A DNA stretch of 64,000 nt from IMG/VR virus record IMGVR_UViG_3300042566_001512, positions 144,808-208,807 of that record. One strand, written 5' to 3'. The translations under genes and the position numbers were made by a program. Shown here one piece after another: positions 22,907-54,289 of the stretch; within the stretch, counting starts at the first letter, position 1; every line of letters begins with the position of its first letter. The notes beneath the pieces are model-generated. The model worked only from the letters and a program-made list of their open reading frames with translations, was not told where the DNA came from and did no database searches.

Positions 22907-22967
22907 CCGATTCCAAATAATTTCAGTCACATATATCTAAGGTGAATAGAAGCAATAGTGTTTCTAT
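22907..22967 (+). promoter_or_regulatory. 61-bp repeat copy 1: putative early promoter + leader hairpin
   Basis: Identical to 51775-51835. Confidence 0.8.
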
Positions 22968-22992
22968 ATATTTTATACTCGGAAAGAATATC

Positions 22993-23223
22993 ATGACTGC
23001 TGTTTATAAATTGACAATTGCCGCCATTTGCCTGCTTATCGCCAACAAGCTAGATTCCGTAATCCGCACAAACGAGCAGGCGGCTCTTTGTCAGGCGGCA
23101 AAGGAAGACGATGCTCAAGTCTCCAAACGTTGTGAAAAAGCGCTGCTGGCGGCAACGCACATTAAAAAGAATATCCTCTTAGGGATTCTCAGCGGCAGCG
23201 GATCGAGCAAGCGATCCAAATGA
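22993..23223 (+). CDS. small hypothetical early protein
   Basis: 76 aa from ATG 22993; the longer GTG start at 22942 lies inside the promoter repeat. Confidence 0.55.
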   Translation: MTAVYKLTIAAICLLIANKLDSVIRTNEQAALCQAAKEDDAQVSKRCEKALLAATHIKKNILLGILSGSGSSKRSK

Positions 23224-35900: not shown

Positions 35901-38900
35901 TTACGTTGAGCTTTACTCTTCTGCTAAACAACTTGTTTAATTTCTTAAACCCAGAAATTATTTTTGCAGAAGTAGAGGTCTTCAAAGGTTTTCCATTTTG
36001 ACCTAACAAACCTTCGTCTATGTCCTCGTTGCTCAAAACCATGGTTTCTTCTTTCTGGTCCCAAACAGGTCCGTCAATGTCGGAGACCAAAGAAATAATC
36101 TTTCCGGTTTTCTCAGATATGTATCTGCCGGCTTTCATGAGTGCCGCTCTTAGTCTAGGCTCAGGCTCACCCTTTACATATACGTCCTGTGGCTTACTGA
36201 GGTAGCGTATAAAACCACCTGCAACTTTAGCAGTGGCTCCGGCCAAACCCCTGGTTATTAACTTGGTTAACTTCAACCCCTTTTTCATTGTCCAGGCAGC
36301 TGCGGAGGTGAGTTTATTCATTATCCATTTTGCTGGTTTAAATGGATTAAATATGCCAAGCATAGAGTTATAAACACGCAAGTTTGGTAAGTCCTCGTCA
36401 AAGATTTTGACGTTACCTGCGGCGTCAACCACTTCGCCATTTATGTCGTTTTGATGATATATGGGCCTTCCGGTTGACCTGTTAAAGTACTCTCCGTTTC
36501 TTAGCCTGGTTGCGTATAGTCTAGGCTCCGGTTCGTCACCCGCGTATACGTCTTTTACGCTATATGGACCTGTCCCCATCGTAAGTTTTGCTAAATTTAT
36601 GCCAAATTTAGCGCCCTTTGCCAGCATTCTGAAGTTAAACTTTGTAAGCGGTATACCTATTTTGTTATAGTACCAAGAAACTCCGCCTATTACTTTTCCT
36701 GCTAGTTTTAATAATTTCCTAATAGGCGCAAATCGCTTTTGCCTGCTATCGTATACCACGAGGCTGTCTAGTTCTTCTACCGATACAACTGACCTGCCTT
36801 TTTCATCCTTTACCTCGCCTTGGATTTGTTCGGGTAAATAAATAGTCTTTCCAGAAATTGCGTCAGAGTAGTGGCCTTGTTGCATTTTAACTGCTGTCAT
36901 TCTGGGGTATTTTTCACCACCGACCCAAACGTCTTTGGCGCCGCCAAAAGCTACGCTTTTGAACATGTCGACAGTGTCCTTTACACCTGTCCAGGCCCTT
37001 TTTAAAATATCTACTGCTACAGATCCGGCCTTTGTGTTTTTTATATTTTTGGCTATTCCGTCAAATGTACCTTTTGCATAGTCGCCAAATCTTTTATACT
37101 GGCCGTCTTTATCTTTTACGTATGACTGATCAAGTTCATCGGATTTCAGTACGGTTTGTCCGCTTACGATGTCCTTAACGGTTCCGTTTATGTCAGACAA
37201 GGTTTTTACTATTTTTCCAGACGCCAGATCCACGTAGTGTCCCGCCTGTAGTTTAGCTTTTATGATTCTGGGGTTTTCTTCGCCCGAAACTCTCAAATCA
37301 ACCCATTTGTCTTTGAGAGTAAATGAGAGCTTTTGTATTTTGTCCTTTATCTCAGAATACGATTTACCAGAATAACCATCCTGGTTATTTCTTTCTTTAG
37401 AATCGTTTAGTTTGGTGGAAACTTTTCCTAGATAATTTTTAAATTTCCCGTATTGGCCGGATACTCTTTTACCTACATTGGCCTCGCTTATTTTTTGCTT
37501 TTGCTTCTTAAAGAAAAGTTTAGCTTTTGTAAACTGAGTCTTTCCTTTGTTTAATATATCTCCGGCGGGGCCGTTACTGTTTTCTTTGTTTACTTTATCT
37601 TTTTCTTCAAACTTACTGGCTTTGAACAAATCTGTAATTTCTTTGTAATAGCCTATAGAAGTGTCTAGTCTCTGTATAATTTGTTTAAAATAAACTTCAC
37701 AGTCTTGATCTTTCTTAGATAAAGGCGAGTAGTCGGATCTGGTAAATGAAGAAGTACCAACAGAAGAATAATCCGCAGAGGAAAAGGAGCCGACTCTACT
37801 GGAGACTTTGTCTGGCGCAACTGTGGGTTTAGAGATACCGGTTTTTTGCTTACGCACATTAGGCATCCGGCGCTTTTTGCCGATTTGGCCTTTGTAGAAG
37901 TCTTCCATGTCAAGATCATAACCTTCTTCTTTTCTGGTTATAATCCCAAGCTGAACCAGCTCGTTTTGTCTACCTTCCGATATAAGCTGCTCTATGGTAG
38001 CCCTAGGGTCGTTCATGCCTCTTACCAGGGAGTTCATCTGTCTATTGAGCAACAGCATTTCACTGGGCTTACTTTCCAAGTCGGACAAGTACTTACTTGT
38101 CAGTTCCTTTGGTCTTCCCTCCAAGCCCTTTTCCAGCTTAGATGACTGCATTTTATTTTTCAGGAAGGCCTGTTTTATGCTTATTCTTTCTTCCTCACTG
38201 AGTTTGTCCTCTGACTGAGAATCTATTTTATCTATAATTTTATCAAGGATGTCGTTTGTTCTTTTGGCATCATTGTCGTTGTATACTCTTGAGGCTATGC
38301 TCTTGAGTAATTTCGTTTTCCCAGTAAATCTGCCCTTGTCTTGATCGTACTCCACTCTGTCTATGTTTGGATTTCCCGTACGAATAATTTGAATTTCTTG
38401 CAAAATTCTAGACAAATATCCAGGTATAATTTCGTTGATGGATCTTTCGGTTTTCAGTGTAAACGGCTGTACAGCGCTTAAGTCTTTACCCGTGAGTCTA
38501 TTAAAACTACTGTCCACGTTTAGGGACGGCAAGATAGACTGCAGGCCGCGCATGATCCAGGCGCCTATGCCTTCTTTATTCGACCACGAATCGTCCTTCC
38601 TGAAATTTTCCGCGCTCCCTACTATATTTTCATTAAAGTTTTCTAGGTAATCCCCAACCTGCTCCACCTTAGGAAATACCTTTTTGATAGGTTCTTTAAA
38701 GCGCTTAGCAACACTGTAACCTACCGTGTTTGCCAAAAGGTCACCCGCGATCTCGCCACCTGTTTGATAAGTATCAAGCATGCCGGGCGCTACCTGTTCA
38801 CGAGCCATCTCAGCATCAGTAAGTCCAGATCTGAATCCCTGGGCATTTCTTTTTATAGTTTCTATAGTTCTATCTCGTATTTTACGAGTAGTCATTTGTA

Positions 38901-39828
38901 GATATTCGTCTGCGCTGGGCAATAGACCTCTAAAAGCAGTGCCGACAGTATCCGAGAATTTACCGAATAGTTTCTGACTGCTAAGTTCTTTTAGATTTAT
39001 TTTTTGCCAATCAGGAAGACCCGTGTTTTTAATTAACTTATTGTAAGCGTCTACGTGCAGTACGTGGGTTTTATTTACGGTCTCTAGTATGTCGTACTGA
39101 GCGAACAGCTGACGGTGCTGTAACTCAAGAGATTTTTTCTGATATTGTAGATTAATAGTGGTTTGATATTGTGATATCCTGGATAAGGACATCGCGGATT
39201 GATTTAACAGACTAAAGATGTCACGGTGTCTGTTTAGCTCAATACCTTCTTTTATTAGATCTTGACCTTCGTTCTCTATCTTATTATTTTCGGACTGTAC
39301 TATTTGTTCTTTGAATACTTCTGCAAGCTGTATGGATATTGCCGAGTCTCTTTGATCTCTGGCAGACAGGGCGGAACCTAGTTTTTGTTCATCCTTGGCT
39401 TCGTCCTCCCAGCGCTTAAAGATATCCTTTAATCTGCCGGGTATAAATTTACTATCCTTTGGTGCAAGCTTGGAAGCTACTCTTTTAAAGTCCTTTATGG
39501 CCGGCCGTACTTCTGCCGCTGCTTCACTATAGAGCTGCCTTAAATTCGTGGCAACCTTATCCCCCATGTCTAGTGTGTCGCCGTACCCTTTTGGCAGCAA
39601 TTCCCGCAATACACCAGTTATAAAAGAAGGATCGCTTACTTTGGCCTTTATCCCGCTTTTTAATCCGTCTTTAACTTTTGTGGCTGGTTTTCTATCGTCC
39701 TTAAAAGGATCAGCCTGAAAATCTATGTCGTCAAAAACGAGTTCATTATCAAAATCAAAACCGTTATCTAATGTGTTTGCTACTTTCTTACCCTTAGACA
39801 TGATTTTTATCTTTCTGTGAAAAAACAC
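32962..39828 (-). CDS. tape-measure protein / tail-associated lysozyme (phiKZ gp181-like)
   Basis: 2288 aa; Gly/Ala-rich membrane segment; C-terminal lysozyme-like KESNGNYN...AVGKYQII...QDKLA...EWASLP; divergent from vRNAP beta'. Confidence 0.88.
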   Translation of the reverse strand: MFFHRKIKIMSKGKKVANTLDNGFDFDNELVFDDIDFQADPFKDDRKPATKVKDGLKSGIKAKVSDPSFITGVLRELLPKGYGDTLDMGDKVATNLRQLYSEAAAEVRPAIKDFKRVASKLAPKDSKFIPGRLKDIFKRWEDEAKDEQKLGSALSARDQRDSAISIQLAEVFKEQIVQSENNKIENEGQDLIKEGIELNRHRDIFSLLNQSAMSLSRISQYQTTINLQYQKKSLELQHRQLFAQYDILETVNKTHVLHVDAYNKLIKNTGLPDWQKINLKELSSQKLFGKFSDTVGTAFRGLLPSADEYLQMTTRKIRDRTIETIKRNAQGFRSGLTDAEMAREQVAPGMLDTYQTGGEIAGDLLANTVGYSVAKRFKEPIKKVFPKVEQVGDYLENFNENIVGSAENFRKDDSWSNKEGIGAWIMRGLQSILPSLNVDSSFNRLTGKDLSAVQPFTLKTERSINEIIPGYLSRILQEIQIIRTGNPNIDRVEYDQDKGRFTGKTKLLKSIASRVYNDNDAKRTNDILDKIIDKIDSQSEDKLSEEERISIKQAFLKNKMQSSKLEKGLEGRPKELTSKYLSDLESKPSEMLLLNRQMNSLVRGMNDPRATIEQLISEGRQNELVQLGIITRKEEGYDLDMEDFYKGQIGKKRRMPNVRKQKTGISKPTVAPDKVSSRVGSFSSADYSSVGTSSFTRSDYSPLSKKDQDCEVYFKQIIQRLDTSIGYYKEITDLFKASKFEEKDKVNKENSNGPAGDILNKGKTQFTKAKLFFKKQKQKISEANVGKRVSGQYGKFKNYLGKVSTKLNDSKERNNQDGYSGKSYSEIKDKIQKLSFTLKDKWVDLRVSGEENPRIIKAKLQAGHYVDLASGKIVKTLSDINGTVKDIVSGQTVLKSDELDQSYVKDKDGQYKRFGDYAKGTFDGIAKNIKNTKAGSVAVDILKRAWTGVKDTVDMFKSVAFGGAKDVWVGGEKYPRMTAVKMQQGHYSDAISGKTIYLPEQIQGEVKDEKGRSVVSVEELDSLVVYDSRQKRFAPIRKLLKLAGKVIGGVSWYYNKIGIPLTKFNFRMLAKGAKFGINLAKLTMGTGPYSVKDVYAGDEPEPRLYATRLRNGEYFNRSTGRPIYHQNDINGEVVDAAGNVKIFDEDLPNLRVYNSMLGIFNPFKPAKWIMNKLTSAAAWTMKKGLKLTKLITRGLAGATAKVAGGFIRYLSKPQDVYVKGEPEPRLRAALMKAGRYISEKTGKIISLVSDIDGPVWDQKEETMVLSNEDIDEGLLGQNGKPLKTSTSAKIISGFKKLNKLFSRRVKLNVSEAIKPNSSIKNKKDKEATTGEQTVSLLGDIKNTFTDFFAEKKVKGDRDGDGDREGSWEDIKARRDAERAKQQSSKTAEPGKEKDKKGGLIGLLSGALDAITGFLGGFKTLLKGGGVLSGLGKLLGIGRVAGLAGSAVTAVAGAGGVGAAATGALGALGAGLAAVVSSPVTLGILGAAAVGYGAYKGYKAVRRWMSKPTVLDNIRYVQYGFKKEETSYFSKIVDLEEYLKQFVKVGSEKAELEEKKIDIEEMMSIFGFSSKDNDHKRQFGTWYIKRFKPVYLTHVSALSILNGSIDLSKINDLKKDVKLKYIEATKFPSGPYKTGTLPILGGKYVASDSADVSAAIEAALKEFATPAGDAKKTATGLPTDVKPPQEAANTAVRVDLGKPDEKAKPSGTAVTGASTVGSTILKNTVSAFDAIRYKTYGIKELELSKVIALNKLENETSKLIKIQGTKATFDDNFNELLQKVNVYFGISDLFGPAAVSWGKWFRDRFLPVYLNYVTAHITETGKPPKAEAPVIISPNKIVQVAKTISSINGVWSVTDSPWPGYQVNTDSSSVEGNLEYLAERAKEKTQHDYVAKTKPADSTPLKSDTASTSKEVAVDKSRASNNAPALNNNAQNNTLGTSIVSKDKDPKYDDGASQVMKSRKDSGLMTADIKREPVKTFDPATNTLLEFIGQKESNGNYNILVGGKTEPNLTKMSIAEVSDYQKDMIARGHESTAVGKYQIIRKTLSGLIKAGYAKATDIFNPVTQDKLAVGLLKMRGLDNYVKGKIDAGQFADNISKEWASLPYKTGRSYYAGVGSNKSSGAREDFVRVVSAVSSSPKINGDYVMPAAAQQPPRLPPEQLASSQIEGPKSSYNPKVRPIAQQEKAVQASKQASSSPLNDAVGVNPRVAGTSTENNNAAKNTLTADIMVNTESLLAQSLIVHKETLDIMKLIYDKINTVSAAKETANVPTSKSDGRKYEPPSAPVSMRKSA

Positions 39829-51432: not shown

Positions 51433-51463
51433 ATAAATGGGAGGCGTTTGCCTCCCATTTATG
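51433..51463. terminator. palindrome after protease
   Basis: ATAAATGGGAGGC-gttt-GCCTCCCATTTAT-G. Confidence 0.65.
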
Positions 51464-51547
51464 CTGACTGTAAAATCTTTAAGTCACATATTCTTTATTT
51501 GCGAACGGAACGGATTCATATATACTGCAAATTAAAAAGGAACAGAC

Positions 51548-51769
51548 ATGCCTAAATTTCTCGTAGAGATCAGTACTAAGTCTTGGATTGAAAACCCGAA
51601 GATTATTTGTTATAAAGAAGTAGAGGCCGCTGAGGAATATGCCGCAAGGCATAAAGCATTTCGTGACTTCGAGAACGATCTCAAATATAAGCCTTCCGTA
51701 AAGAAGATAATGACCCTGAACAATTTGGAAGTATCTGATGTAGCCGCCAGTGATGCGGTAGAACTGTAG
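51548..51769 (+). CDS. small hypothetical early protein
   Basis: 73 aa; AAGGA SD; preceded by AGTCACATATTCT motif at 51482. Confidence 0.7.
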   Translation: MPKFLVEISTKSWIENPKIICYKEVEAAEEYAARHKAFRDFENDLKYKPSVKKIMTLNNLEVSDVAASDAVEL

Positions 51770-51774
51770 AAATC

Positions 51775-51835
51775 CCGATTCCAAATAATTTCAGTCACAT
51801 ATATCTAAGGTGAATAGAAGCAATAGTGTTTCTAT
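51775..51835 (+). promoter_or_regulatory. 61-bp repeat copy 2: putative early promoter + leader hairpin
   Basis: Identical to 22907-22967. Confidence 0.8.
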
Positions 51836-51862
51836 TTCATTCAAAAATATAGGAGCTAATAC

Positions 51863-51970
51863 ATGTTCAAAAATGTTATCATTGCCACTGGCAAGATCGT
51901 CGGAGTGGCAATGGGCGTGGCGATTGGCATGCTGGCTGCGCAAAAAATCACCGAAACCATGAAAAAATAG
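51863..51970 (+). CDS. 35-aa membrane micro-protein (not in ORF track)
   Basis: MFKNVIIATGKIVGVAMGVAIGMLAAQKITETMKK; AGGAG SD; GxxxG-type helix. Confidence 0.75.
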   Translation: MFKNVIIATGKIVGVAMGVAIGMLAAQKITETMKK

Positions 51971-51980
51971 GCTATTCTAA

Positions 51981-52586
51981 ATGATTTTCCCGACCAAGTC
52001 TGCATTCGTGCAGTTTGTAAGAACGTCAAATCTTCCAGTAACTGAGCAAGATGCCCTGATTGAGATCGTTGTGGAACATCACACCGATGGCGAAATCTCA
52101 GTGATCGGAGACTGCGACGACGTGATCGGCTTAACCTTCACGTCAGACCACGATGTTCAGCTGGTGCTGGATATCGGATTTGCAATCATCCGCGCAAGCA
52201 GTTCCCCCCAATCCCCCAGTAAAGTATACGTCACCAAGGAAACCAAAATGAGCGAACAAGCCCAAGCCCAAAACAAAAGCGCCGCCCCCGTCGAAGCCGA
52301 TATGGAGGCAACCCTCGCGATGATGAAGGCAATCATCGACGAGAGTGTGGCCTCCGCTGTGCAAGCAGCTCTGGAGAAGAAAGAAGCCGAGCGCGCGGCA
52401 AAAGAAAATGGCCCCGAGGCCCAAAGAAATGAGCCCACTCAAGCACCGGTGGCCACGCCCGACAAGGGCGGACGGGCCACTGTCATGAGTCCCTGGGCAA
52501 AAGCGGCGGCTTATACCGCTGGAGCGGCAGCGGTGGCGGCCGGTGGCTGGTACGCGTGGAAGAAATTCGGTACTCAGTCCACCTGA
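51981..52586 (+). CDS. C-terminally membrane-anchored protein (internal start at 52248)
   Basis: Ala/Glu helical linker; tail AAAYTAGAAAVAAGGWYAWKK; internal AAGGA-ATG. Confidence 0.7.
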   Translation: MIFPTKSAFVQFVRTSNLPVTEQDALIEIVVEHHTDGEISVIGDCDDVIGLTFTSDHDVQLVLDIGFAIIRASSSPQSPSKVYVTKETKMSEQAQAQNKSAAPVEADMEATLAMMKAIIDESVASAVQAALEKKEAERAAKENGPEAQRNEPTQAPVATPDKGGRATVMSPWAKAAAYTAGAAAVAAGGWYAWKKFGTQST

Positions 52587-52640
52587 TTCAGTAAGTTAAC
52601 AAACAGGAAACGCGGTAAGAGATTGCCGCATTAATCAATC

Positions 52641-52742
52641 ATGAAACGTTCGTTCCTTGCTGGCGCAAAAGTTGGCGCTTTCTTGGCTGGCCTGTCCACG
52701 CCCTTTGGTGTTAGTGGTATGTGCCGCCTCTTGGCTTCGTAA
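52641..52742 (+). CDS. 33-aa hydrophobic micro-protein (not in ORF track)
   Basis: MKRSFLAGAKVGAFLAGLSTPFGVSGMCRLLAS; similar to the next ORF. Confidence 0.55.
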   Translation: MKRSFLAGAKVGAFLAGLSTPFGVSGMCRLLAS

Positions 52743-52754
52743 GGAGTAATAGTA

Positions 52755-52868
52755 ATGGATCTGAAAAACGCCCTAAATAGGGGATTGAAGGTAGGTACCT
52801 TTGTTGCCGCTGCTGTGACACCTGTGGTGGCCGTTCTTGTGATTGCGTCTTGGTTGAAGAGCAACTGA
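52755..52868 (+). CDS. 37-aa membrane micro-protein (not in ORF track)
   Basis: MDLKNALNRGLKVGTFVAAAVTPVVAVLVIASWLKSN; AAGGAG SD; terminator follows. Confidence 0.75.
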   Translation: MDLKNALNRGLKVGTFVAAAVTPVVAVLVIASWLKSN

Positions 52869-52874
52869 CGACAA

Positions 52875-52920
52875 ATACACTGACGGGCATTGCCCGTCAG
52901 TGTATGCTTTTTTTCTTTTC
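52875..52920 (+). terminator. intrinsic terminator
   Basis: ATACACTGACGGGCA-t-TGCCCGTCAGTGTAT then T tract. Confidence 0.8.
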
Positions 52921-52935
52921 CGATTGCAATTTACT

Positions 52936-52954
52936 ACGACTACATATTACTGAT
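52936..52954 (+). promoter_or_regulatory. putative early (vRNAP) promoter
   Basis: ACATATTACTGA contains the phiKZ early-promoter hexamer TATTAC; upstream of 53058. Confidence 0.55.
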
Positions 52955-53057
52955 ACACGGTAGCTACGATTAAAGGGCTTTTTGGTAGTAAAAAAATATA
53001 CGAACCCCTACATCCAGTAGAAGCCGGAGTTTAACCAGTTTAACCAATAGGAGTAAA

Positions 53058-53621
53058 ATGAAAGTTGATTTTAATGGCCAATCTTACAATCTGCGGACGC
53101 TGGTATCTCTAGCTGGGTTCGGTCGACAAGAGGTGGTGCAAAAGACAAACATTTTTGTGGTAGACGGGTCTACTTATAAATGCAAAATACCCGTATGCAC
53201 TATCTACGACGGTAAGACGTACTTGTTAGCCGGAGAATTGCCGGTTAATAAAACCGATGTACAGGTCAGCATTCTAACAAAACACGTATTGAAAAAGGCA
53301 CTCGTCTCTAGTCAAGCATTCCAGCCGGATACCGGTTTCCGGCCACGGCCATTATTTGCGCCTGGCGAAGGTGAGGTGATAGGTGTAGAAGAAATGAGGG
53401 CTATTGCCATGTCGCGGTTAAATGCAAGTCAGCACTTGAACAAACGAAACGGTGCGCACGCAGACTCCTTCGTAAATCGCAGACCGGTAAAAACTCACGC
53501 TGATCAATTCTACCACCACGTCGACGACGGGCACCGTACAAACGGTGGAAGTCCTCAAATTATCGATAAAACCAGATTGGCGCTAAGTATACTTGAGGCA
53601 ACGATCTCCAGAGGGTTCTGA
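53058..53621 (+). CDS. hypothetical protein
   Basis: 187 aa, AGGAG SD. Confidence 0.7.
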   Translation: MKVDFNGQSYNLRTLVSLAGFGRQEVVQKTNIFVVDGSTYKCKIPVCTIYDGKTYLLAGELPVNKTDVQVSILTKHVLKKALVSSQAFQPDTGFRPRPLFAPGEGEVIGVEEMRAIAMSRLNASQHLNKRNGAHADSFVNRRPVKTHADQFYHHVDDGHRTNGGSPQIIDKTRLALSILEATISRGF

Positions 53622-53827: not shown

Positions 53828-54289
53828 ATGAAAACCGAAACAAAGAACCAAATCGACATCCTGGCCAGCAAACTTTCTAGCAAAATCGACATCAAAGACG
53901 GAAGCGCCAGCATCAGCGAAGACGCTTACGTTAAATCGTTGCCGGAAGGTCTTGACATCGAGACCGTAAAAAAGCTACAGGATCACAATGCAAACTTCTT
54001 CCCGGCGGTGACTAAGGCGTTCGCAGAAAAGTCTATTGAAGCGATGAAGGCCGACAATAAGATCGAGCAACTAGATCTGTCCGTGCCCATGGTCGGCGAG
54101 GACAAGTTCGATGTCACGTTTAAGCGCTCTTACGAGCACATGGACATCGCTTCGAAAGAAATGAAAAAGAGCTTCGGCGGCATCAGTGCTTCGTTGACAG
54201 TTCAGGCTGCTCGTCACAATCGCGGCGCGATGTCCGCGATCAAAAACGAAATGAAGGCAGCTGCATTGGCTGCGTTTGCAGAAGAGTGA
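53828..54289 (+). CDS. conserved jumbo-phage hypothetical protein, probably highly expressed
   Basis: 153 aa; YVKSLPEGLDIETVKKLQDHN; biased codons; AAGGA SD; own CACATATAACT motif at about 53653 and own terminator. Confidence 0.8.
   Translation: MKTETKNQIDILASKLSSKIDIKDGSASISEDAYVKSLPEGLDIETVKKLQDHNANFFPAVTKAFAEKSIEAMKADNKIEQLDLSVPMVGEDKFDVTFKRSYEHMDIASKEMKKSFGGISASLTVQAARHNRGAMSAIKNEMKAAALAAFAEE

What the first reader, a model, noticed from the sequence alone, without database searches (positions are those of the whole stretch)
51863..52868. Unannotated early operon of membrane micro-proteins, including a paralogous pair
Seen: behind the 61-bp repeat lie a 35-aa ORF (AGGAG SD, GVAMGVAIG), a tail-anchored 201/112-aa ORF, and 33-aa and 37-aa ORFs sharing G(A/L)KVG(A/T)F(L/V)A...TP, closed by a terminator. 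All are GC-richer than neighbouring genes and each has one hydrophobic Gly/Ala-rich helix. Inference: a dedicated early membrane-remodelling module, for example superinfection exclusion, inhibition of host membrane complexes, or a role in the early phage infection vesicle known from nucleus-forming phages.
Basis: partly seen in the sequence, partly recalled or inferred. Interest (0 to 1): 0.6.

Follow-up and report, generated by a model that had tools for sequence, protein, structure and literature searches.

The report
Conserved early membrane micro-protein operon
Just after its head-protease gene, an uncultured nucleus-forming jumbo phage carries a small operon for four tiny, probably membrane-embedded proteins; the operon is conserved in five related uncultured phages, so the genes are real, but their job at the host membrane is unknown.

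Summary
The ORFs, Shine-Dalgarno sites, shared motif, higher G+C and closing terminator are all present as described. The window is the last 64 kb of a 208.8-kb chimallivirus genome that encodes chimallin, PhuZ and a phiKZ-type capsid protein. An exhaustive HMMER search found five relatives of the 201-aa protein. Their contigs carry the same gene order, so the module occurs in six lineages in all. Synonymous sites are saturated while the peptides keep 40-70% identity (pN/pS 0.4-0.5), so these are real genes. There are three corrections. First, the 33-aa ORF is a frameshifted copy of a conserved 35-aa gene, with one extra base at 52701-52708. It is a true, ancient paralogue of the 37-aa gene. 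Second, the 201-aa reading is correct, but an internal SD-ATG at codon 90 is invariant in seven family members, which suggests a second, 112-aa product. Third, "unannotated" is only partly true. The "61-bp repeat" is one of about 31 promoter-plus-hairpin sites. These precede chimallin, PhuZ and an RNAP subunit but no virion gene, which supports early expression. No family, fold or RNA evidence gives a function. An early envelope role such as exclusion is the best guess, held weakly.

The parts
51775..51855 (+). Promoter-plus-leader repeat. The promoter core AGTCACATAT is at 51793-51802. The leader hairpin is at 51815-51834 (extended form 51809-51843). The SD AGGAG is at 51851-51855.
   Evidence: It scores 40.7 with the promoter matrix, among the highest of about 31 sites, all on the + strand. 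82 bp are identical to the copy at G000 38130. The hairpin is paired in 90.5% of cells, and its covariation score is reached by 2 of 500 shuffles.
51863..51970 (+). o35: a 35-aa protein with a Gly/Ala/Val-rich helix (GxxxGxxxG).
   Evidence: Its codon score is like that of real genes, and 0 of 486 null ORFs score as high. Orthologues sit at the same position in L055 and L056 (57-65% identity, pN/pS 0.38). Kyte-Doolittle 1.99.
51981..52586 (+). o201: a 201-aa protein. It has a folded N-terminal domain (51981-52244), linkers around a predicted long helix, and a conserved Ala/Gly-rich C-terminal helix (residues 171-196, 52491-52568).
   Evidence: Five full-length relatives at E 4e-19 to 2e-5. The tail has the invariant pattern K.A.Y...V...G..AW.K. 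In the AF2 model the N-domain has pLDDT about 90.
52236..52250 (+). Internal SD (AAGGAA, 52236-52241) and ATG (52248-52250) inside o201. Initiation here would give a 112-aa product made of linker plus tail only.
   Evidence: The pattern [AG]AGGA[AG]-N6-ATG is invariant in 5 orthologues and 2 paralogues, within an otherwise variable linker.
52612..52629 (+). Hairpin between o201 and the next gene. That gene has no SD in any of the five phages.
   Evidence: A hairpin lies at the same place in all five phages, with different sequences and energies of -7.6 to -19.2 kcal/mol.
52641..52749 (+). o33: a frameshifted copy of a conserved 35-aa gene. Frame A runs 52641-52706. One extra base lies within 52701-52708. 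The homologous frame continues to the stop at 52747-52749. As read, the ORF ends at 52742.
   Evidence: The family HMM hits two frames that split at the conserved Pro. Intact orthologues are at L055 4844-4951, L056 896-1003, L054 1378-1485 and L059 2164-2271. As read, the ORF has a null-like codon score.
52755..52868 (+). o37: a 37-aa single-helix protein and paralogue of o33. Its SD AAGGAG (52741-52746) lies inside the end of the intact o33 frame.
   Evidence: Orthologues are present in four relatives (43-59% identity, pN/pS 0.53). G10, G14, A18, P23, V27 and W33 are invariant across both paralogue groups. Kyte-Doolittle 2.43.
52875..52915 (+). Intrinsic terminator that closes the operon.
   Evidence: It has a 14-bp stem with 8 GC pairs and a T-run. 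A terminator sits at the same position in all relatives.
51548..51769 (+). o73: a 73-aa soluble protein with its own weaker promoter (motif at 51482). It is a variable upstream neighbour of the module.
   Evidence: Its orthologue in L059/L060 is 62% identical with pN/pS 0.34. It is absent from L055.
52921..52960 (+). The next promoter of the same class (motif at 52938). It serves the conserved gene at 53058-53621.
   Evidence: It scores 29.7 and is conserved in L054-L059.

Best explanation
This is a real operon of four genes, conserved in a small clade of uncultured freshwater and wastewater chimalliviruses.

Transcription (inferred). A virion-RNA-polymerase-type early promoter makes an mRNA of about 1.05 kb. 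The mRNA starts with a 5' stem-loop and ends at an intrinsic terminator.

Products.
- o35 is a 35-aa peptide with a glycine zipper.
- o201 is a 201-aa protein with a folded 88-aa N-terminal domain, a helical linker and a conserved Ala/Gly-rich C-terminal anchor. A conserved internal SD-ATG probably also yields a 112-aa form with linker and anchor only.
- o33 and o37 are two ancient paralogous peptides of 35-37 aa, each with a GxxxGxxxA...P...W helix. In this genome o33 carries a one-base frameshift.

Likely action (inferred, not shown). The peptides insert into the host inner membrane soon after infection and associate through their small-residue helix faces. The o201 domain is then held on the cytoplasmic side to bind or sequester a partner, and the short isoform tunes the assembly. 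The most likely purpose is an envelope-level early function, such as excluding further infection or blunting a membrane-associated host response.

My sub-confidences: real genes 0.95; early expression 0.7; membrane location 0.75; exclusion or envelope defence as the purpose about 0.25.
For: - Conservation. Full-length relatives of o201 exist, and the whole gene order recurs in L054, L055, L056-58, L059/60 and the P0004 contig.
- Selection. pS is saturated at 0.6-0.8 while pN/pS is 0.38-0.53 for the three micro-proteins.
- Coding signal. o35, o201 and o37 have gene-like codon scores.
- Paralogy. The o33-o37 match is about 7 sd above shuffles, and the family HMM splits across two frames in the window.
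- Internal start. The SD-ATG is invariant in 7 genes.
- Promoter class. The motif scores 28-41 upstream of PhuZ, chimallin, RNAP beta, the ligase operon, o73, o35, o187 and g153. It scores at most 0 upstream of the capsid, protease, virion and tail genes. A review states that the motif one can find bioinformatically in such phages is the early vRNAP promoter (PMC7598289).
- Operon boundaries. Terminator and leader hairpin.
- Hydrophobic helices. Kyte-Doolittle 2.0-2.5 for o35, o33 and o37. AF2 predicts a C-terminal helix at residues 171-196 of o201.
Against: - No RNA or protein data exist. All 10 public runs that hold the stretch are DNA metagenomes.
- The early class is inferred by association only.
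- The o201 tail is weakly hydrophobic in this phage (about 0.84).
- No TM predictor was available, and topology is unresolved.
- No known family or fold points to a function.
- The module is absent from more distant chimalliviruses, so it is accessory.
- The operon sits among virion genes, right beside the head protease.
Confidence: 0.5

Rival explanations
1. Head-assembly accessory proteins. The module anchors or nucleates procapsid assembly at the inner membrane, and o201 is a substrate of the adjacent S80 prohead protease, cut after the invariant Glu.
For: - The operon lies directly after the Peptidase_S80 gene in every relative where the flank is known.
- The residues before the internal Met read S/T-K-E in 7 of 8 family members. 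This fits the S/A/G/T-X-E cleavage motifs of these proteases (PMC5694885).
- T4 heads nucleate on the inner membrane (PMC5694885).
Against: - The operon has the promoter class of chimallin and PhuZ, not that of the capsid and protease genes. It also has its own terminator.
- The module is missing from 45 more distant relatives, which keep the protease and neighbouring core genes.
- The invariant Met at a fixed 6-nt spacing is explained by an SD-ATG, not by a cleavage site.
Confidence: 0.12
2. A lysis module. o201 and its short form act as a dual-start holin/antiholin-like pair, and the micro-proteins act as pinholin-like or accessory membrane-permeabilising peptides.
For: Two products in one reading frame from a conserved internal start recall dual-start holins (the comparison is from my own knowledge). 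The cassette also has several small hydrophobic helices with small-residue motifs.
Against: - No muralytic gene lies within 2 kb.
- A better lysis candidate exists elsewhere: an SLT transglycosylase with a signal anchor at genome 83288-83788 and an N-terminal-TM protein at 84059-84433. However, those genes also lie just downstream of promoter-class sites at 83023 and 83851, so the promoter motif is only weak evidence against a lysis role here.
- The C-terminal anchor with a tiny tail is not a typical holin architecture.
- The early-type promoter argues weakly against it.
Confidence: 0.08
3. Host shut-off by membrane damage. The glycine-zipper peptides form pores or inhibit a host membrane machine (respiration, division or secretion) to arrest the host early.
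For: GxxxG-type motifs are invariant in o35, o33 and o37. The operon has an early-type promoter. Other early cassettes in the same genome also start with small TM ORFs.
Against: There is no similarity to any toxin or inhibitor family. The conserved cytoplasmic domain and dual start of o201 are not needed for a simple pore. The idea is untested.
Confidence: 0.12
4. Spurious or decaying ORFs with no function.
For: As read, o33 has a null-like codon score and no SD, and it is frameshifted. No homologues exist outside a narrow clade.
Against: All four genes are kept in order in lineages that have diverged to synonymous saturation, with pN/pS well below 1. Downstream of the frameshift, the o33 sequence still matches its orthologues (SWLRKE is identical to L056).
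Confidence: 0.03

Closest known systems
PeSL cassettes (promoter-early stem-loops) of T4-type phages (PMC2839356, PMC4122927)
   Same: Both are short, near-identical promoter-plus-stem-loop units dispersed through the genome. Both flank small accessory ORFs in variable regions. Here two copies share 82 identical bp, and the interval between the protease gene and g153 is a length-variable hot spot.
   Different: The promoter here is not sigma-70-like; it is a phage-specific motif of the kind used by jumbo-phage virion RNAPs. The stem-loop lies downstream of the promoter and has no T-run, so it looks like a 5' leader rather than a terminator. Recombination between copies was not shown.
T4 Imm and Sp and other superinfection-exclusion proteins (from my own knowledge)
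   Same: They are small, early-expressed, accessory proteins of lytic phages, located in the membrane or envelope.
   Different: There is no sequence or fold similarity. This module has four products, including a domain-bearing anchored protein. Exclusion was not tested.
Dual-start holin/antiholin genes such as lambda S105/S107 (from my own knowledge)
   Same: One reading frame gives two membrane products from two conserved starts.
   Different: The two starts here are 89 codons apart and remove a whole folded domain. The hydrophobic helix is C-terminal. The promoter class and the lack of an adjacent endolysin argue against a lysis role.
C-tail-anchored inner-membrane proteins ElaB/YqjD/YgaM of E. 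coli (DUF883; from my own knowledge)
   Same: The architecture is alike: a helical cytoplasmic part, then an Ala/Gly-rich C-terminal helix flanked by Trp and basic residues.
   Different: There is no Pfam hit at E up to 10. Only o201 has the extra N-terminal alpha/beta domain.
Anti-sigma Ser kinases RsbW, SpoIIAB and UsfX (GHKL-type alpha/beta sandwich)
   Same: These are the best structural matches of the 88-aa N-domain over its whole length: Z 5.5-6.1, rmsd 3.0-3.3 A, 78-88 residues aligned.
   Different: Z is below the level at which the tool's own notes allow more than a common arrangement. The domain is about 40 residues shorter, and no conserved Gly-rich or Asn motif of an ATP site appears in the alignment. 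Foldseek found nothing.

Membership tests
PeSL regulatory cassettes (T4-type phages) | A strong sigma-70-like early promoter | tested here: not met
   The sigma-70 consensus scan found no site at 51775-51855, and only 3 sites in the region against 4.5 expected. The conserved motif is ..CACATAT[AT]ACT...
PeSL regulatory cassettes (T4-type phages) | A stem-loop that acts as a terminator | tested here: not met
   The hairpin at 51815-51834 has no T-run and lies after the promoter core. The real terminator is separate, at 52875-52915.
PeSL regulatory cassettes (T4-type phages) | Dispersed near-identical copies flanking accessory ORFs in variable regions | tested here: met
   Five near-identical and about 26 looser copies exist. 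The hot spot between the protease gene and g153 varies from 0.2 to 3.4 kb.
Jumbo-phage early (virion RNAP) promoters | A conserved AT-rich motif, findable bioinformatically, upstream of early operons | tested here: met
   About 31 sites were found, all on the + strand. They lie upstream of chimallin, PhuZ and RNAP beta and not of virion genes. The definition comes from PMC7598289.
Jumbo-phage early (virion RNAP) promoters | Transcription starts there early in infection | not testable with these tools
   No RNA run holds this phage.
Holin/antiholin | The gene lies adjacent to an endolysin and is expressed late | tested here: not met
   The neighbouring genes have no muralytic domain. The SLT gene is 113 kb away. 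The promoter is of the early type.
Holin/antiholin | Membrane permeabilisation on expression | not tested
   This needs an experiment.
Spanins | An i-spanin with an N-terminal TM plus an o-spanin with a lipobox | tested here: not met
   No product has a lipobox Cys after a signal peptide, and the o201 helix is C-terminal.
Substrates of the S80 prohead protease | An S/A/G(/T)-X-E motif at the processing site | tested here: inconclusive
   S/T-K-E is present in 7 of 8 family members, but the same codons form the internal SD.
Substrates of the S80 prohead protease | Presence in procapsids or virions | not testable with these tools
   No proteome exists for this uncultured phage.
GHKL anti-sigma kinases (RsbW/SpoIIAB) | A Bergerat ATP-binding fold with N, G1 and G2 boxes | tested here: not met
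   Z is only 5.5-6.1. The invariant residues are F3, F12, L26, F53, H57, D58, V59, I70 and E87, with no Gly boxes.
Any Pfam, PHROG or NCBIfam family | A profile match above the curated cut-off | tested here: not met
   No match reached a cut-off for any of the four products.

The most novel reading that the evidence does not exclude
The module is a phage-made inner-membrane platform specific to the chimallivirus life cycle. In this reading, the micro-proteins and the anchored o201 mark or remodel the host membrane for one of the two membrane-bound steps of these phages: the early infection vesicle, or the membrane-bound start of capsid assembly next to the protease gene. The N-domain would recruit a phage or host partner, and the short isoform would set the stoichiometry. 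No phage-encoded membrane protein came up for either step in the papers read here.
Probability: 0.1. Interest if true: 0.85.

Novelty: new variant of a known kind. Interest (0 to 1): 0.45.

Why it matters
Chimalliviruses pass through two membrane-linked stages: the early infection vesicle, and capsid assembly on the cell membrane. No phage-encoded membrane component came up for either stage in the papers read here. A conserved, probably early operon of membrane micro-proteins beside the head protease gives concrete candidates to test.

The case also shows that ORFs of 35-37 codons in jumbo phages can be validated by synteny and by substitution patterns. It shows that a micro-ORF which looks like noise can be a frameshifted real gene. 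Finally, it adds a likely dual-start tail-anchored protein family and a promoter-plus-leader-hairpin repeat with a conserved loop motif to what is known of jumbo-phage gene regulation.

Tried and rejected
- **DNA and protein searches of the phage collection.** blastn of the region, tblastn of o201 and tblastn of an o37 orthologue found nothing.
- **IMG/VR relatives.** Relatives found through the protease are at most 56% identical. They lack the module by tblastn and by family HMMs.
- **Word-based protein searches.** The o201 search returned only itself, and the o37-like and o35-like searches only near-identical proteins.
- **JGI metagenome scan** with the o201 alignment: no confirmed relative.
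- **Family libraries.** Pfam, PHROGs, NCBIfam and PDB sequence searches gave nothing above noise.
- **ESM Atlas**, by features and by structure: nothing usable.
- **Foldseek** against PDB and BFVD: no match at E 0.001 or better.
- **Rfam and tRNA scans** of the region: nothing.
- **Reads.** No RNA run exists. The DNA contigs of three other studies are identical inside the ORFs wherever they cover them, so they carry no substitution signal, and they do not cover 52576-52679 or the frameshift site.
- **Complex prediction** of the intact o37-like and o33-like peptides of L056: no verdict (score 0.03). This is evidence neither for nor against binding.
- **Rejected idea: a recent insertion private to this phage.** The module is shared by six lineages.
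- **Rejected idea: foreign origin as the cause of the high G+C.** The core gene g153 has the same GC3 (0.62), and the orthologous modules are GC3-rich in all relatives.
- **Read-through of o33.** I used a four-letter step and an X at the break only to display and compare the gene. No recoding is claimed.

Full report
**What is in the window**

- o35 lies at 51863-51970, with AGGAG 7 nt upstream.
- o201 lies at 51981-52586, with an in-frame ATG at 52248.
- o33 lies at 52641-52742.
- o37 lies at 52755-52868, with AAGGAG upstream.

A 14-bp-stem terminator with a T-run follows at 52875-52915. G+C rises to 0.55-0.60 across 52100-52700, against 0.41 for the genome. The GC and GC3 of o201 are each about 3 sd above the mean of 92 long genes. 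Rfam and tRNA scans of the region find nothing.

**Which genome this is**

The window is the last 64 kb of a single 208,807-bp record. It is an IMG/VR virus record with an estimated completeness of 76%.

The genome encodes these hallmark proteins:
- a Peptidase_S80 head protease immediately upstream of the finding (E 6e-80);
- a chimallin (95 bits against a cut-off of 27);
- a PhuZ-type tubulin;
- the phiKZ major capsid protein;
- a split RNA polymerase beta subunit.

It is therefore a nucleus-forming jumbo phage (chimallivirus). All 10 public runs that hold the stretch, from 8 studies, are DNA metagenomes from lake, freshwater, wastewater and faeces. No RNA run holds it.

**Are the genes real?**

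Early searches were blank.
- Nothing matched in the phage collection.
- IMG/VR relatives share at most 56% identity in the protease and lack these ORFs.
- The word-based protein search returned only the query.

The exhaustive HMMER search then found five relatives of o201. They match over the full length at 31-39% identity, with E from 4e-19 to 2e-5. Their contigs carry the same gene order:
- the protease gene (seen in L055);
- sometimes an o73 homologue (L059/L060);
- the promoter repeat;
- an o35-like gene (L055, L056);
- the o201-like gene;
- a hairpin;
- an intact o33-like gene of 35 codons;
- an o37-like gene;
- a terminator;
- a promoter of the same class;
- the homologue of 53058-53621;
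- the homologue of 53828-54289.

Substitution patterns show purifying selection. Between these phages synonymous sites are saturated (pS 0.6-0.8). The micro-proteins nevertheless keep 40-70% identity, with pN/pS of 0.38 (o35), 0.43 (o33) and 0.53 (o37). For comparison, the core gene g153 has 0.21. A codon-usage score trained on this genome puts o35, o201 and o37 among real genes. Between 0 and 0.8% of 486 null ORFs score as high.

**The paralogous pair and the frameshift**

The o33-o37 similarity scores 44 against 17.4 +/- 3.7 in shuffles. It is the best match of o37 among 1437 small ORFs in the genome. The second-best match is the overlapping +1 frame of the same locus.

A family HMM built without the window's o33 hits the window twice. 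Frame A matches model positions 1-23 (E 7e-7), and the +1 frame matches positions 23-37 (E 5e-3). The split falls at the invariant Pro. Compared with the relatives, the window has one extra base within 52701-52708.

Read through with an X at the break, or by a one-base step used only for display, the gene has 35 codons and ends in SWLRKE, exactly as in L056. Its stop at 52747-52749 then lies just after the SD of o37. This is the arrangement seen in the relatives and suggests coupled translation.

As printed, o33 has a null-like codon score and is in no protein collection. The laid contigs do not cover the site. I therefore cannot tell an assembly error from a very recent mutation or a +1 shift at CCC-U. 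Both paralogue groups occur in all five lineages with DNA in hand, so the duplication is ancient. Both groups share invariant G10, G14, A18, P23, V27 and W33.

**The 201-aa protein**

The alignment starts at residue 1-3 in every relative, so the long reading is correct.

AlphaFold2 gives these elements:
- a confident N-terminal domain of two helices on a five-stranded sheet (residues 1-88; pLDDT about 90 in the full model and 83 when folded alone);
- a low-confidence linker;
- a long helix at 104-142;
- a second linker;
- a C-terminal helix at 171-196.

The tail is the most conserved part, with the invariant pattern K.A.Y...V...G..AW.K. Its hydrophobicity is low in this phage (about 0.84 by hand) and modest in the relatives (1.3-1.7). 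It may need partner helices to stay in the membrane.

The internal Met is invariant. It is preceded by [AG]AGGA[AG] at a fixed 6-nt spacing in all five orthologues. The same is true of two shorter paralogues, in L054 and L059, which have a different N-domain. I take this as a conserved second start that yields a form with linker and anchor only. This is an inference.

The best structural matches of the N-domain are the anti-sigma kinases RsbW, SpoIIAB and UsfX (Z 5.5-6.1). That is too weak to claim kinship, and no ATP-site motifs are conserved. Foldseek and the Atlas found nothing.

**The repeat and the temporal class**

The "61-bp repeat" is a dispersed unit. A position matrix finds about 31 sites, all on the + strand. 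Five of them are nearly identical. The copy at genome 38130 shares 82 identical bp with the one here, including the SD.

A hairpin follows the promoter core.
- It is paired in 90.5% of cells, with covariation reached by 2 of 500 shuffles.
- Hairpins are enriched downstream of all the sites (mean -6.2 against -3.6 kcal/mol, p 6e-6).

The motif divides genes cleanly.
- It scores 28-41 upstream of PhuZ, chimallin, RNAP beta, the ligase operon, o73, o35, o187 and g153.
- It scores 0 or less upstream of the capsid, protease, virion-protein, tail-tube and tail-sheath genes.

The relatives use the same motif at the same places. A review states that in RNAP-encoding jumbo phages the bioinformatically detectable motif is the early promoter of the virion RNAP (PMC7598289). 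Early expression is therefore a reasonable inference, but it is not shown.

**Function**

Nothing in Pfam, PHROGs, NCBIfam, PDB sequences or the Atlas identifies any of the products.

My best reading is an early inner-membrane assembly. In it, the small-residue helices of o35, o33 and o37 pack with the weak anchor of o201, holding the o201 domain at the membrane. An exclusion-type or envelope-defence role seems the most likely purpose, but I hold it at only about 0.25.

Three rivals deserve mention.
- **Head assembly.** The operon always follows the S80 protease gene. The residues before the internal Met (S/T-K-E) fit the cleavage motifs of these proteases (PMC5694885). [quoted passage not shown] Against it stand the promoter class, the operon's own terminator and the module's absence from 45 more distant relatives.
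- **Lysis.** The dual start recalls holins. However, the likelier lysis genes lie at 83.3-84.4 kb. Those genes also sit just downstream of sites of the same promoter class, so the motif argues only weakly against a lysis role.
- **Early host shut-off** by membrane damage.

A complex prediction for the two paralogues gave no verdict.

**Comparison and novelty**

The regulatory layout works like the PeSL cassettes of T4-type phages (PMC2839356). It fails their defining features, which are a sigma-70 promoter and a terminator stem-loop. The proteins belong to no known family. The kind of element is familiar: an early, accessory cassette of small phage membrane proteins. This particular combination, in a chimallivirus and beside the protease gene, is new. 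The title word "unannotated" is only partly right.

Noticed in passing
Whole genome; window sites 11265, 22925, 23435, 51482, 51793, 52938 and 53650: About 31 promoter-like sites on the + strand are each followed by a hairpin. The loop motif CAATAGTG recurs on different stems, both in this genome and in relatives L054, L055 and L059. This suggests sequence-specific recognition of the leader hairpin.
   Followed up: partly
L047:18130-19101 (G000 38130-39101): A second cassette has an 82-bp promoter, leader and SD identical to window 51774-51855. It is followed by a 47-aa Gly/Val-rich TM ORF, a 47-aa ORF with an N-terminal TM and a 94-aa ORF.
   Followed up: partly
window 22925-23220: Another near-identical copy of the repeat drives an 88-aa ORF with an N-terminal hydrophobic helix.
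   Followed up: no
L052:5084-5400 (G000 125084-125400): A copy of the repeat is followed by no convincing ORF. It may drive a non-coding RNA.
   Followed up: no
window 52921-53057: The long 5' leader of the gene at 53058-53621 is conserved in L054-L059. It includes the palindrome GTAGCTAC and a TGTAAAAATTGAT box.
   Followed up: no
window 52612-52629, and the same place in L054, L055, L056 and L059: A hairpin of varying sequence sits 8-14 nt before the SD-less start of the o33-type gene in all five phages. It may be an attenuator, a processing site, or a device that brings an upstream SD-like AGGA closer to the start codon.
   Followed up: partly
L050:3288-4433 (G000 83288-84433): An SLT transglycosylase with a signal-anchor-like N-terminus, and a 124-aa protein with an N-terminal TM, lie just downstream of promoter-class sites at 83023 and 83851. 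They are the likelier lysis genes.
   Followed up: partly
window 51446-51449, 52890, 52908, 53499 and 53521: Differences among metagenomes fall in hairpin loops and T-runs: the protease terminator loop, 52890 T>A in the operon terminator loop, and a 1-nt deletion in its T-run. There is also a substitution at 53499 and an in-frame CGA insertion at 53521. None lies inside the four ORFs where they are covered.
   Followed up: yes
L001-L045, interval between the protease gene and the g153 homologue: This interval varies from about 0.2 to 3.4 kb in distant relatives. In L012, L014 and L017 it holds unrelated small TM ORFs, so the site repeatedly collects membrane ORFans.
   Followed up: partly
L054:73-507 and L059:654-1136: Relatives carry a second, shorter paralogue of the anchored protein. 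It has the same tail and internal SD-ATG but a different N-domain. They also carry extra micro-ORFs: a 37-aa type beginning MKALAL, and in L059/L060 a 71-aa two-helix protein.
   Followed up: partly
window 51548-51769: o73 is a conserved 73-aa soluble protein of unknown function with its own weaker promoter. It is present in L059/L060 and absent from L055.
   Followed up: partly
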